Source of the DNA: Malacoraja senta | Lineage: Eukaryota | Direction of reading: 5' to 3' | Length of the DNA: 43,319 bases | Assembly (NCBI GenBank): GCA_038087875.1 | Contig: JAXLNO010001139.1 | Location: 591 to 43,909 of the forward strand | Position numbers and translations under genes: made by a program | Notes under the pieces: generated by a model | Database searches by the model: none | Told to the model about the DNA's origin: nothing | Seen by the model: only the letters and a program-made list of their open reading frames with translations | In this document: one piece after another, positions 11,161 through 36,170 of the stretch | Layout of the letters: each line of letters begins with the position of its first letter | How positions within the stretch are numbered: position 1 is the first letter of the stretch

Positions 11161-11427
11161 TTTCCCCTGAGGTCACTCTCGCTGCCCGCCCTGATGATCA
11201 TTCAGTCCTGTACTGCACTGTGTTTGGATTTTACCCACCGGCCATCAATGTCAGCTGGTTGCAGAATGGTCAACATGTCTCTGAGACCAAATCTTCTGGG
11301 GTCATACCCAACAACGATGGAACATATCATCTAAGGTCTGTCCTTGAGTATGATCCGTATGATGGGAAACAGTATTCCTGTCATGTCGATCACAGCAGCC
11401 TGCCCGGTGGGAAGACCATCATCTGGG
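11161..11427 (+). CDS. MHC class I-like heavy chain, alpha3 (Ig C1-set) exon
   Basis: AG acceptor at 11159-11160, GTAAGA donor at 11428, phase 1/1, 267 nt, no stops: SPEVTLAARPDDHSVLYCTVFGFYPPAINVSWLQNGQHVSETKSSGVIPNNDGTYHLRSVLEYDPYDGKQYSCHVDHSSLPGGKTIIW. Canonical C-x3-GFYP-x5-W, PNxDGTY, YSCxVxH and terminal W of MHC Ig domains. Confidence 0.92.
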
Positions 11428-11714
11428 GTAAGAACGTTAAATATTCTTTCATAGATAATCATTATCTTCTGTTGTTTCCATTTTAATCATCATGAATACA
11501 TCCCATATTCCAAGATGCTTAAACTTTCTTTGTTTAGTGGTGTTGCTCTAAGTAATCACGTAATCAGCACCCACTCTCCACATGAGCAGAAGACTTTGTC
11601 AACAGAACATTTATCAAAAGTAAATAAATAACTAATATATAAGGAAGGAGTATTTGAGATTCTCAGTGGTGGAACTGAAATCTATGAAAGGTATGTTTAA
11701 ATAAAAAATGAATC

Positions 11715-12420
11715 TTTCCTCATGATGTGATTAACAACAAGGCACTGGGGGAGTACATGCCCCAATCTGAATCAATGGTCCGAAGTGGAAATGATTGAGA
11801 GCTTCATGTTCCTTGGCATGAATTTATCCAATATTCTGTAAAGGACTGACCACATAGCCAAGGAGGCACACCGACACCTCTACTTCCTCAGGAGACTGAG
11901 AATATTCATCATGTCTCTGGTGACTCTAGCAAACATCTATAGATGCCGCTAGAGAAAGCATGTTGTTGGGTTGCATCACATCTTGATTTGGGAACTGCAC
12001 TGCCCAAGACTGCAAGAATATACAAAGAGTTAAAGATCATCACACAGGCCAGACTTCCCACTATTGGCTCAATCTACACTAGGTTGCCTTGGAAAACGAG
12101 ACTTATCCCAACCTTCCTCCTTCTTGCTCCCATCAGGCATTAGGTACAGAAAGTTGAAAATATGCACTGCCAGACTCAGGAACACCCCCTTTCCACCTGT
12201 TAACAGGCTTCGGAAGGGTCCTTCCATAATGTAGGTTTAATGCCCGATTCACCTCAACCTCATTGAACATTGAACATTGTCCATGGAACTGATGTGTTAC
12301 AATGCTGAGAACTATATTCTGTACTCTGTATCCTCCTCTTTGCTCTATCTATTGTTTTTGAGTTTGTATTTATGTATAGTTTTATAATTTGTTTGGATAG
12401 CATACAAAACAAACTTTGCT
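11715..12420 (+). mobile_element. Rex1/Babar-like LINE ORF2 3' part and 3' UTR
   Basis: Degenerate EVEMIESF.FLG...KEAHRHLYFLRRLR...LGCIT..FGNC...PSG.RYRKLK across frameshifts. Confidence 0.8.
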
Positions 12421-12619
12421 CATATTTTGAAACATCTGGCGTTAATAAAACTAAACCTAATGAAGTAAGTTCCATGACGCAAGTTACAGATTCAGCAACG
12501 AAAAATATAACTGCCTGACAAACAGCGATCGTAGAAGTTTGATTCCAAGTATGCTGCACTAACCTACACAAATGCTCACTTTTGAAGATTCCCTCGAACA
12601 ATGCACAACTAAGGAATCT

Positions 12620-12945
12620 GATGTTTCACTCTGAAGACTCTTGACATACCCCAGAACTTAATTTCCAACCTATCTATGTATCATCAGCAATCTAGGCTAC
12701 AGCGCCACCAGTCCCTTCATCTGCTCTTAATACCAACGATAAGTAGTTCACTTTCTTGCATTGATTCCCAACCTGCAGTTGCAGTTTCCCAACCAGAACA
12801 CTCCTTTAAGACAACTCTCTGCTTGCTCTTAATTGTTTTTCCATTCATGCTAATTATTACCCCCAATGTCATAAGCCATGTGCCTTTGCATCACTTGATC
12901 AGATATCTTATGAAAATCCAGATATTGTGGCGACATCTGGTGGTC
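12620..12945 (-). mobile_element. Degenerate CR1 RT fragment
   Basis: Minus strand contains (I/F)ADDT*IG (YADD-like) and the LDFHKISDQV (DF.KAFDKV-like) region. Confidence 0.55.
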
Positions 12946-13326
12946 AGGCCACTTATTGCTAGAACCCTCGTCAGGGCAGCTGGGACTATCACGTGAGTGA
13001 CAGGGTTTTGGTGGGAGTTGGTGATGAGTTAATCGCCAGTCAACTGGTGTGCCCGATAACAACGGCAGGAACTTTGCTCAAGTCCTTACTAAACGCGAGT
13101 GGGCCAAAACTGTATTTCTTTAAAAAAACATTGATTTGTTCACGACGTTTGGATCTCTACAATATATTGTATTTCTTTTGTTTCTCATTCCAATTTTGTT
13201 ACCTATTCTGCTTTTCCATCATTTTGTTTATGAATTTTAGGCTTTTCACACCTGCTGCTCGAATATACATTGTCTACGGGTTCCTGTTGCATTTTCAAAG
13301 AGTTCTAATCAATTTCTCAAACAAAG

Positions 13327-13530
13327 TTTGAAGAAGGGTCCCAAAACGAAACGTCACCTGTCCATGTGTAAGAAGAAACTGCAAATGCTGGTTTACACCA
13401 AAGATGGACACAAATTGCTGGAATAACTCAGCTGGTCAGCCAGCATCTCTGGAGAAAAGGAATAGGTGATGAATCCATGTTCGCCAGAGATGCTGCCTGT
13501 TCCGCTGTGTTACTCCAGCATTTTGTGTCT
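13327..13530 (+). repeat. Penelope-tail repeat carrying an inverted copy of the same family (13368-13473, TSD TCCATGT)
   Basis: TCCATGT at 13361-13367 and 13474-13480 brackets a minus-strand copy; the plus copy keeps GAAACGTCACC. Confidence 0.7.
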
Positions 13531-13620
13531 ATTATGTATATTCTTTCCCCTGATTGGTTAGCATGAAACAAAAGCTTTTCACTGTACCTCAATACATGTG
13601 ACAATAAACTAAACTAAAGC
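13530..13620 (+). repeat. Rex1/Babar-like 3' tail
   Basis: aaaagcttttcactgtacctcaatacatgtgacaataaactaaactaaa. Confidence 0.7.
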
Positions 13621-35169: not shown

Positions 35170-35310
35170 TTTTTAAAAGGGCAAGTTTTTATTACATACT
35201 ATGTGGTGTGTGCCTGGAAAGCACTGCCAGGGATGGTGGCGTCTGGGGTGCACCTTTGTGGTGCATGGAGATGCAGGGGTTTGAGGGACATGAATCATTT
35301 GCAGGCAGAT
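35170..35310 (+). mobile_element. CR1 3' end remnant
   Basis: tgcctggaaagcactgccagggatggtgg...catggagatgcaggggtttgagggacatgaatc. Confidence 0.55.
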
Positions 35311-35488
35311 GCTGCCTAACTGGTGTCTGTCCGACTGATCTGGAGGGATCTGATGGTCAGGCAGGGAATATTTCCAGTGACCCAATGGTGCTGAGTTCGC
35401 TGAATTTTACGGTGAATGGGAATGCCCCTGTAATAGAGGAACAGGTCCTTTGTCCAACAACGTTTGTGCTGAACATGACGCAACCTGA

Positions 35489-35730
35489 GGCAGAGTGGCG
35501 CTGCTGATAGAGCTGCTGCCTCAGTGCGTCATAGACATCAGTTCAATCCTAACCTCGCTTGTCGGCTGTGTGAAGTTTGCATGTATTCCCTATGACCGCA
35601 TGGGTTTCCACTGTCCTCCAGTTTTCACACACATACTAAAGATGCCAGGTTTTATGGGTTAATTGGTCTCTGTAATTTGACCCTAGTGTGGAAGCGAAAG
35701 TTAGATAACATAGAACTTGTGTGAACGAAA
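35489..35730 (+). mobile_element. V-SINE, degenerate
   Basis: ggcagagtggcgctgctgatagagctgctgcctca head, GTTCAATCC B-box, V-domain. Confidence 0.7.
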
Positions 35731-35754
35731 CTATTTGAAGGAGTATTGAGTTTT

Positions 35755-35998
35755 TTGTTTAGTTTAGAGAGAGAGCATTGAAACAGACACTTCGGCCCCA
35801 CTGAGGCCGCACCAACCAACGATCACCCACATAAGCTAGGAACACGTCAATTAACCTACAAACCTGCACATCTGTCTTTGGAATGTGGGAGGAAACTGGA
35901 GCACCTGGAGAAACCTATGCAGTCACAGGGAGAAGGTACAAATTCCGTACAGACATCACCCGTGGTCAGGATCAAACCCAGGTGTCTGGCACTGTGCC
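35755..35998 (-). mobile_element. V-SINE, degenerate (tail-to-tail with the previous copy)
   Basis: tttagtttagagag tail and V-domain in reverse. Confidence 0.75.
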
Positions 35999-36129
35999 TT
36001 TATATCTGGAAGGAAGATGTTATGTGGGATGAATCAACAGTTAAAGCGAATAAACTAGTTGCATCTTTCTGAGTTCTCTTCTCTGCTATGCCATTTCTTT
36101 GTTGTCTAATATTTAATTTCCCTCCTCAG

Positions 36130-36170
36130 ATTATCAAAATATTCAACCAAAGCAGAACGTGCACTGCTAA
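36130..36170 (+). CDS. Candidate terminal cytoplasmic exon of the MHC class I-like gene: (D)YQNIQPKQNVHC*
   Basis: Strong acceptor in apparently non-repeat DNA (CTAAT branch-like element, polypyrimidine tract, CAG at 36127-36129); the phase 1 join to the TM exon is in frame; TAA at 36168-36170; AATAAA at 36222-36227. Linkage to the TM exon is inferred across ~22 kb, mostly TE insertions. Confidence 0.55.

What the first reader, a model, noticed from the sequence alone, without database searches (positions are those of the whole stretch)
11161..36170. CD1-like nonclassical MHC class I gene with a YQNI endo-lysosomal sorting tail in a probable cartilaginous fish
Seen: three phase-1-compatible exons splice to an Ig-C1 domain, a TM segment and the tail RKKRR-D-YQNI-QPKQNVHC*. 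The Ig domain has shark class I-like features (SSGVIPNNDGTY, EYDP) and CD1-like ones (YHLRSVL versus CD1 WYLRATL; HSSLPGGKTIIW versus CD1 HSSLEGQDIILYW). The TM has none of the GxxxG pattern of class II or W-category chains. Established: YxxPhi motifs bind AP-2/AP-3, and human CD1b ends RRRSYQNIP. Inference: a lipid-presenting or CD1-like lineage whose trafficking signal is either ancient or convergent. I recall a CD1-like class I lineage being reported in cartilaginous fish, so the gene class may be known; whether the tail motif is described needs checking.
Basis: partly seen in the sequence, partly recalled or inferred. Interest (0 to 1): 0.8.

Follow-up and report, generated by a model that had tools for sequence, protein, structure and literature searches.

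The report
Skate UGA class I pseudogene copy
The three exons are real and belong to a skate copy of UGA, a known shark and ray MHC class I-like lineage reported to bind lipids like CD1. Its tyrosine sorting tail is conserved across sharks and rays, but this copy has lost its alpha2 exon and is one of more than 100 copies in the genome.

Summary
Observation confirmed. The alpha3 exon (11161-11427), the TM exon (14117-14224) and the tail exon (from 36130) have AG/GT borders and phase-1 junctions. A sister-skate mRNA contig joins them in exactly this way.

The lineage is known. The closest solved structure by far is PDB 9CH4, "shark nonclassical MHC class I, UGA" (62-63% identity per exon). A review calls UGA CD1-like and lipid-binding, but only as a personal communication. 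By sequence and fold, UGA lies nearer classical class I and MR1 than CD1.

A YxxPhi motif, with its tyrosine seven residues after the membrane, is present in UGA models of 15 elasmobranch species. Skates have YQNI or YQTI, other batoids YENI or YESI, and sharks a C-terminal YNxV/I. This supports endosomal sorting, which remains an inference.

This copy is not an intact gene. A 2.1-kb deletion removed the alpha2 exon, and at least 18 contigs share the same junction. Alpha1 lies off the contig.

The family has about 101 alpha3 copies but only about 31 intact alpha2 exons. The N gap sits in an intronic LINE and touches no exon.

The scan met this family before on other DNA of this genome; s1-140082 reached the same reading.

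The parts
11161..11427 (+). Alpha3 (Ig C1-set) exon, phase 1 at both ends, open frame of 88 aa
   Evidence: It is 62% identical to 9CH4 alpha3 (E 8e-35) and 95% identical to the sister-skate mRNA contig L070. Runs X1 and X2 cover it while the unique intron stretches read zero.
14117..14224 (+). Connecting-peptide, transmembrane and basic stop-transfer exon (EGNRKKDRHIGLIAV...VLWRKKRR)
   Evidence: L070 positions 957-1065 map here at 94.5%. Contigs of X1 and X2 end exactly at 14224.
36130..36170 (+). Coding part of the last exon: DYQNIQPKQNVHC plus the stop, holding the YxxPhi motif YQNI
   Evidence: AG acceptor at 36128-29. The same peptide and the same AG acceptor occur in all 30 paralogous copies fetched. 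RefSeq orthologue models and three Logan contig proteins end in the same kind of tail.
36171..38114 (+). 3'UTR of the last exon, interrupted at 37149-37794 by sequence that the sister-skate mRNA lacks
   Evidence: L070 positions 1064-2630 map to 36128-37148 and 37795-38114 at 85-88%.
4987..5009 (+). Deletion junction. The 2.1 kb that carries the alpha2 exon in paralogue C4831 (115928-118049) is missing here.
   Evidence: The contiguous junction (window 4880-5120) recurs at 99-100% in 18 contigs, counting this one.
5187..6033 (.). An 847-bp insertion absent from C4831; the two flanking alignments overlap by 9 bp on C4831, as a target-site duplication would
   Evidence: C4831 positions 118219-118227 align on both sides of the insertion.
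17790..30030 (.). A 12.2-kb retroelement block in the TM-to-tail intron. It holds a degraded tyrosine-recombinase-type element and a LINE, and it contains the assembly gap at 25377-25508.
   Evidence: The block is absent from C4831. Pfam finds APE endonuclease and RT on the + strand at 25.7-28.7 kb and an RT remnant on the - strand at 20.5-20.8 kb. Many paralogues share the resulting 24.9-kb spacing class.

Best explanation
The window holds one copy of the skate UGA gene. UGA is a nonclassical MHC class I lineage of sharks and rays, and its shark member has a solved structure (PDB 9CH4).

The intact gene, seen in this genome on contig C4831, has these exons: alpha1, a 20-kb intron, alpha2, a 7-kb intron, alpha3, a 2.7-kb intron, the TM exon, an intron of 10-22 kb, and a last exon. 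The last exon encodes 13 residues plus a 3'UTR of about 2 kb. The leader exon was not located in this genome.

The tail places a YxxPhi motif (YQNI) with its tyrosine seven residues after the membrane. That motif type and that spacing are what adaptor complexes AP-2 and AP-3 read in CD1b and LAMP-1. The encoded protein is therefore most likely taken up from the cell surface and routed to late endosomes and lysosomes, where a lipid-binding groove could load ligand.

What is shown: exon structure, splicing, orthology, motif conservation and transcription of the family. What is inferred: adaptor binding and endosomal routing. Lipid binding rests only on a personal communication quoted in a review.

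This copy is almost certainly a pseudogene. Its alpha2 exon was lost in a 2.1-kb deletion, and the deleted form was then amplified together with the rest of a large repeat unit.
For: Lineage:
- The alpha3 exon, and the alpha2 exon of a paralogue, match 9CH4 at 62-63% identity (E 8e-35 and 8e-34). All other structures are near 30% identity.
- 9CH4 is titled "shark nonclassical MHC class I, UGA".
- An AlphaFold model of the Amblyraja orthologue (pLDDT 93.7) superposes on 9CH4 at TM 0.94-0.96.
- In an ML tree, the intact copy from this genome falls inside a UGA clade with 100/100 support. The branching follows the species tree: skates, then other batoids, then sharks.
- The Stegostoma orthologue matches 9CH4 over all 268 residues at E 7e-170.

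Splicing and expression:
- mRNA contig L070 joins alpha3, TM and tail at the predicted borders.
- RefSeq models for Amblyraja radiata and Leucoraja erinacea, and three Logan contig proteins, end in DYQNI(P/Q)PNQNVPC.
- Runs X1 and X2 cover these exons while the unique intron stretches read zero; the only other depth falls on repeat-like segments.

Motif:
- YxxPhi is present in gene models of 15 species.
- All 9 full-length-tailed Rhinoraja paralogues and all 30 local copies examined keep it.

Pseudogene status.

Constraint on intact copies: across 21 intact alpha2 exons, diversity is 1.06% in the exon against 2.74% in the flanks, and pN/pS is 0.48.
Against: - No binding or trafficking data exist for any UGA tail.
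- Some gene models lack the motif: whale shark (YSLT or another end), Heptranchias and Pristiophorus. Some of these may be annotation errors.
- Lipid binding by UGA is documented here only by a review's personal communication and a PDB title.
- Alpha1 of this copy lies off the contig, so its state is unknown.
- Alpha1-to-alpha3 splicing would stay in frame, so a two-domain product cannot be excluded.
- Which copies give rise to the transcripts was not resolved.
Confidence: 0.85

Rival explanations
1. The alpha2-less form is a working gene. Alpha1 splices directly to alpha3, in frame, and gives a two-domain membrane protein with the YQNI tail. Its amplification would then reflect use rather than decay.
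For: Both junctions are phase 1, so skipping alpha2 keeps the frame. At least 18 copies share the deletion, and their alpha3, TM and tail exons are still open. Earlier scan notes s1-140132 and s1-140120 flagged the same architecture elsewhere in this genome.
Against: The alpha2-less copies differ from one another by only 0.18-0.46% around alpha3. Open frames at that age need no selection to explain them. An MHC groove cannot form from alpha1 alone. No alpha2-less protein appeared among the homologues found in the protein collections. Frameshifted alpha2 copies were amplified as well, which points to passive co-amplification of a large repeat unit.
Confidence: 0.07
2. The tail tyrosine is a phosphotyrosine signalling site, for example a pYxN site for the Grb2 SH2 domain or an ITIM-like site, rather than an adaptor sorting signal.
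For: YQNI and YENI fit the pYxN pattern.
Against: The asparagine at +2 is absent from Rhinoraja (YQTI), Hemitrygon (YESI) and every shark (YNAV, YNVI, YNTV, YNVV). Only the tyrosine and the hydrophobic residue at +3 are conserved. The residue at -2 is basic, which does not fit an ITIM. In sharks the motif ends the protein close to the membrane, as in LAMP-1 and CD1d; that comparison rests on established knowledge and was not tested here.
Confidence: 0.06
3. The hundred-fold copy number is an assembly artefact. One or a few loci were assembled many times over, so the gene family is really small.
For: Most copies lie on short unplaced contigs. Fifteen copies differ from the window by less than 0.5%. 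The review calls UGA single- or low-copy.
Against: The copies differ structurally: alpha2 may be deleted, frameshifted or intact, and the intron comes in 13-15 kb and 24.9 kb classes. Sequence differences range up to 3.75%. RefSeq lists at least 10 distinct UGA-like proteins on one 41.5-Mb chromosome of the skate Rhinoraja longicauda.
Confidence: 0.07

Closest known systems
UGA, shark and ray nonclassical MHC class I (PDB 9CH4, released 2026-03-18)
   Same: It is the best match for alpha2 and alpha3, at 62-63% identity. The fold model superposes at TM 0.94-0.96. The family here falls in one clade with 100/100 support. Domain order is the same, and the lineage-wide changes T143 to F/L and Y159 to L are shared.
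   Different: A review describes UGA as single- or low-copy, whereas this skate genome has about 100 copies. This particular copy lacks alpha2. Batoid tails carry nine more residues after the YxxPhi motif and end in a conserved Cys.
CD1, especially human CD1b with the tail RRRSYQNIP (tail sequence recalled from established knowledge)
   Same: Both have a short basic tail with a YxxPhi motif. The tetrapeptide YQNI is identical to that of CD1b. Lipid binding has been reported for UGA, though only in a review's personal communication.
   Different: UGA is not a CD1 relative by sequence or fold. Pfam MHC_I scores 74-83 bits, while the CD1-type model MHC_I_3 scores at most 30 bits, below its 35-bit cut-off. 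No CD1 appears among the 50 fold matches listed. Shared ancestry of the tail signal can be neither shown nor excluded here.
The neighbouring skate class I lineage (Leucoraja XP_055486430.1, annotated MR1-like), possibly UFA
   Same: It is the sister clade of UGA (100/98) and is 39-45% identical. It lies in the same repeat unit, about 75-90 kb from UGA.
   Different: It is a compact gene, with alpha2 and alpha3 only about 1.2 kb apart. Many copies carry a TAG inside alpha3. The single gene model seen has no YxxPhi motif. The UFA assignment was not tested.
LAMP-1 type lysosomal YxxPhi signals (GYQTI)
   Same: The tyrosine lies seven residues from the membrane. Rhinoraja has YQTI, and in sharks the motif is at the C-terminus.
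   Different: The protein family is unrelated. The resemblance is confined to the sorting signal.

Membership tests
UGA lineage (PDB 9CH4) | Closest sequence relative is UGA, and the family forms one clade with UGA orthologues | tested here: met
   62-63% identity per exon, a clade with 100/100 support, and a Stegostoma orthologue matching 9CH4 at E 7e-170.
UGA lineage (PDB 9CH4) | Complete alpha1-alpha2-alpha3-TM-tail gene | tested here: not met
   For this copy, the alpha2 exon is deleted and alpha1 would lie about 14 kb beyond the contig start. The feature is met by paralogue C4831, which reads open from alpha1 to the stop; its leader exon was not found.
UGA lineage (PDB 9CH4) | Hydrophobic, lipid-binding groove | not testable with these tools
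   No ligand or pocket analysis was possible. The only indirect sign is that T143 is F or L in 13 of 15 orthologues and Y159 is L in all 15. Lipid binding is a personal communication quoted in PMC12562908.
UGA lineage (PDB 9CH4) | Single- or low-copy, MHC-linked gene | tested here: not met
   There are about 101 alpha3 copies in this genome. Linkage could not be tested because the contig is unplaced. Some copies lie on the large contig C9, which exceeds 40 Mb.
CD1 | Sequence or fold membership in the CD1 family | tested here: not met
   MHC_I_3 stays below its cut-off. After UGA, the nearest structures are classical class I and MR1.
CD1 | Tyrosine-based endosomal sorting tail | tested here: met
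   YQNI follows RKKRRD after the TM segment. That it functions as a sorting signal is inferred.
YxxPhi adaptor-binding sorting signal | Y-x-x-bulky hydrophobic, in a cytosolic tail close to the membrane | tested here: met
   The tyrosine is seven residues after the TM segment.
YxxPhi adaptor-binding sorting signal | Conservation across orthologues | tested here: met
   The motif is present in gene models of 15 species. Whale shark, Heptranchias and Pristiophorus models are exceptions.
YxxPhi adaptor-binding sorting signal | Binding to the AP-2 or AP-3 mu subunits, and tyrosine-dependent internalisation | not testable with these tools
   This needs a cell-biological or binding assay.
Classical MHC class I (UAA) | Invariant residues that hold the peptide termini (Y7, Y59, Y/R84, T143, K146, W147, Y159, Y171) | tested here: not met
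   T143 is replaced by F or L, Y159 by L, and position 84 is variable. Y7, Y59, K146, W147 and Y171 are mostly kept.

The most novel reading that the evidence does not exclude
Skates have turned a CD1-like, endosome-targeted class I gene, which is single-copy in sharks, into a family of more than 100 copies. Dozens of these copies are under purifying selection. A recently amplified alpha2-less subfamily is expressed as a two-domain (alpha1-alpha3) endosomal membrane protein, which would be a new MHC-derived architecture.
Probability: 0.07. Interest if true: 0.7.

Novelty: new member of a known kind. Interest (0 to 1): 0.35.

Why it matters
If UGA does bind lipids, a conserved YxxPhi tail in UGA of both sharks and batoids would mean that sampling of endosomal ligands was already in place in their common ancestor. 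It is then either an old feature of class I-like molecules or a convergence with CD1, and a simple tail-chimera experiment can test the sorting function. The skate-specific expansion to about 100 copies contrasts with the description of UGA as single- or low-copy. It would matter for anyone annotating skate MHC regions or looking for restricted T cells. The window itself adds only a decayed copy.

Tried and rejected
- Alpha1 and alpha2 were looked for upstream in the window (open-frame scan, tblastn). Neither is present. Alpha2 is deleted and alpha1 lies off the contig.
- A search for short protein fragments with the alpha3 exon, aimed at alpha1-alpha3 transcripts, found no candidates.
- The leader exon of the sister-skate mRNA was not found within 20 kb upstream of alpha1 in C4831.
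- Read laying listed no alpha3-to-TM joint and no loose end at 14224, because repeat-derived joints filled the tables. Only exon-limited contig pieces could be used.
- No paper naming 9CH4, or describing the UGA tail, was found in the library.
The diversity test therefore rests on 21 copies.
- The GPR139-like gene fused to UGA in some Leucoraja models is absent from the window and from C4831:76000-150715.
- A tree including CD1 could not be built, because no CD1 sequence was available as a tool reference.
- Diversifying selection in alpha2 was considered and rejected (pN/pS 0.48).
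Full report
**1. Observation**

- Alpha3 spans 11161-11427, the connecting-peptide and TM exon spans 14117-14224, and the tail exon starts at 36130.
- Each has an AG acceptor. The first two have GT donors. All junctions are phase 1.
- The spliced reading is ...KTIIW-EGNRKKDRHIGLIAV...VLWRKKRR-DYQNIQPKQNVHC, followed by a stop.
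- Alpha3 is an Ig C1-set domain (Pfam, 3e-20).

**2. The assembly gap**

The N run at 25377-25508 lies in a 12.2-kb block (17790-30030) inside the TM-to-tail intron.
- The block is absent from a paralogous copy on contig C4831. The DNA on both sides is collinear with that copy at 95-97% identity.
- The block holds a LINE with APE endonuclease and reverse transcriptase, plus older retroelement remains.
- The alpha3-to-tail distance in the window is 24,877 bp. That is within about 20 bp of paralogues on C1769, C6101, C5457 and C5151.
- So order and spacing are sound, and no reading frame crosses the gap.

**3. Splicing and expression**

A protein-collection search with a paralogue's alpha2 exon found RefSeq models from two skates.
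- Amblyraja radiata XP_032898133.1 ends ...RKKRRDYQNIPPNQNVPC.
- Leucoraja erinacea XP_055521885.1 ends ...RKNRRDYQNIQPNQNVPC.
- Three 334-aa proteins called on short Logan contigs have the same tail.

One of these contigs, L070 (SRR11241640, 3455 nt), carries the whole CDS without introns, so it is an mRNA.
- It maps onto the window as three blocks that end and begin at the predicted splice sites.
- It then runs on as about 2 kb of 3'UTR.

Contigs of four public runs were laid on 11100-14300.
- Two runs (X1 and X2) cover the alpha3 and TM exons, and the unique intron stretches read zero. The only other depth falls on repeat-like segments.
- Their pieces start at 11159 and end at 11427 or 14224.
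- X1 has 0-1 mismatches in alpha3.
- The family is therefore transcribed in this or a very close species.

**4. Identity**

- The best solved structure for alpha3 (E 8e-35, 62% identity) and for the paralogue's alpha2 (E 8e-34, 63% identity) is 9CH4 chain A. The next alpha2 hits are near 30% identity (classical class I, MR1, ZAG).
- An AlphaFold model of the Amblyraja ectodomain (pLDDT 93.7) matches 9CH4 at TM 0.94-0.96. Foldseek gives the entry title as "Crystal structure of shark nonclassical MHC class I, UGA", released 2026-03-18.
- The other 48 listed matches are bird, shark and fish class I and MR1. No CD1 is among them.
- Pfam scores MHC_I at 74-83 bits. The CD1-type model MHC_I_3 reaches at most 30 bits, below its 35-bit cut-off.
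- In an ML tree of 57 class I sequences, the UGA group forms one clade with 100/100 support. It comprises 15 orthologue models plus the intact C4831 copy from this genome. The branching follows the species tree.
- The other class I gene of the skate repeat unit is the sister lineage, with 100/98 support.
- The Stegostoma orthologue matches 9CH4 over all 268 residues at E 7e-170.

Literature:
- Verissimo et al. 2023 mention an unpublished CD1-like lineage, UFA (PMC10751288).
- A 2025 review says UFA and UGA are CD1-like, single- or low-copy and MHC-linked. It adds that crystal structure and mass spectrometry suggest they bind lipids. This is given as a personal communication (PMC12562908).

**5. 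The tail**

A YxxPhi motif follows five or six mostly basic residues after the TM segment in models from 15 species.

| Group | Species or set | Tail motif |
|---|---|---|
| Skates | this genome, Amblyraja, Leucoraja | DYQNI |
| Skates | Rhinoraja, 9 paralogues with full-length tails | DYQTI |
| Other batoids | Pristis | AYENI |
| Other batoids | two Mobula species | DYENI |
| Other batoids | Hemitrygon | DYESI |
| Sharks | Heterodontus, Stegostoma, three Scyliorhinus, Cetorhinus, Mustelus | YNAV, YNVI, YNTV, YNIV or YNVV, ending the protein |

- Whale shark (YSLT), Heptranchias and Pristiophorus models are exceptions. Some of these may be annotation errors.
- Only the tyrosine and the +3 hydrophobic residue are conserved. 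That fits an adaptor sorting signal better than a pYxN or ITIM site.
- The tyrosine is seven residues from the membrane. From established knowledge, this is the range typical of lysosomal YxxPhi signals such as LAMP-1 GYQTI and CD1b SYQNI.
- Binding to AP-2 and AP-3 is an inference.
[quoted passage not shown] It gives no detail, but an independent endosomal route in another fish class I lineage would be a precedent for convergence.

**6. This copy is broken**

On C4831 every exon from alpha1 to the last exon is intact, and the spliced frame is open from alpha1 to the stop. Its leader exon was not located.

| Exon on C4831 | Position |
|---|---|
| alpha1 | 95846-96108 |
| alpha2 | about 116355-116631 |
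| alpha3 | 123353-123619 |
| TM | 126307-126415 |
| last exon | starts near 136546 |

- The window lacks C4831:115928-118049, which includes alpha2. Window 4987 is followed, after about 21 bp, by sequence equal to C4831:118050 onward.
- The contiguous junction recurs at 99-100% identity in 18 contigs, counting this one. Only 40 of 2131 candidates were scored, so this is a lower bound.
- Alpha1 would lie about 14 kb beyond the start of this 43.9-kb contig.

**7. The family**

- The alpha3 exon occurs about 101 times at 93-100% amino-acid identity, and only 3 copies carry a stop.
- For alpha2, 31 copies are intact, at least 14 have a frameshift or a TGA, and several are truncated.
- The tail exon gave 118 candidates. 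The 40 that were scored are 99-100% identical.
- All 30 tail-exon copies fetched encode the same tail peptide.
- Around alpha3, the window differs by 0.18-0.46% from 15 copies and by 0.8-3.75% from the others.
- Across 21 intact alpha2 exons, diversity is 1.06% in the exon against 2.74% in the flanks, and pN/pS is 0.48. This fits moderate constraint on the intact copies (gene conversion was not excluded), with no diversifying selection.
- A second class I gene lies 75-90 kb away on the same contigs, so the repeat unit is large.
- RefSeq lists at least 10 distinct UGA-like proteins on one Rhinoraja chromosome. Sharks and Mobula show one or two genes. The expansion looks specific to skates.

**8. 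Verdict**

- The lineage is already known as UGA and is annotated in RefSeq under generic names.
- It is not CD1 by descent, as far as sequence and fold can show.
- This locus is a decayed copy.
- Earlier notes of this scan on other pieces of the same genome reached the same reading. These are s1-140082 for UGA and the conserved tail, and s1-140132 and s1-140120 for copies without alpha2.

Noticed in passing
own genome, e.g. G000:C4831:48567-50293, with the same arrangement on many other contigs: A second, compact class I gene is amplified together with UGA, 75-90 kb away on the same contigs. It resembles Leucoraja XP_055486430.1 (annotated MR1-like) and is the sister lineage of UGA. Many copies carry a TAG inside alpha3. 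It may be UFA.
   Followed up: partly
window 36159-36170 and the orthologue tails: Every batoid UGA tail with the full last exon runs nine residues past YxxPhi and ends in Cys (NVHC, NVPC, NMRC, NRRC, NLRC, NVNC). Shark tails stop at YxxPhi. A conserved C-terminal Cys could be a lipidation or disulfide site.
   Followed up: no
window 38721-41057 (- strand) and 18700-20810 (- strand): Retroelements that encode a reverse transcriptase together with a phage-integrase-type tyrosine recombinase, as DIRS-like elements do. One copy lies downstream of the gene and a degraded copy lies in the intron.
   Followed up: partly
window 23724-29675 (+ strand): A LINE with a 351-aa ORF1 that matches no Pfam family and an ORF2 with APE endonuclease and reverse transcriptase. 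The assembly gap lies between the two ORFs. A second LINE lies in reverse orientation at 30088-33075 and is shared with paralogue C4831.
   Followed up: partly
window 37149-37794: The 3'UTR is interrupted by about 650 bp that the sister-skate mRNA lacks. This stretch includes a CA-rich run that reads as His-Thr repeats in ORFs at 37232-37574.
   Followed up: no
own genome, around alpha3 (L001-L030): Copies that are nearly identical around alpha3 (0.4% apart) differ upstream, where alpha2 may be deleted, frameshifted or intact. This suggests mosaicism from unequal crossing-over or gene conversion between repeat units.
   Followed up: partly
Scyliorhinus model P0198 (297 aa): An annotated isoform joins alpha3 directly to the tail exon (...GKTVPW-DYNTV), skipping the TM exon. 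It could be a soluble form or an annotation artefact.
   Followed up: no
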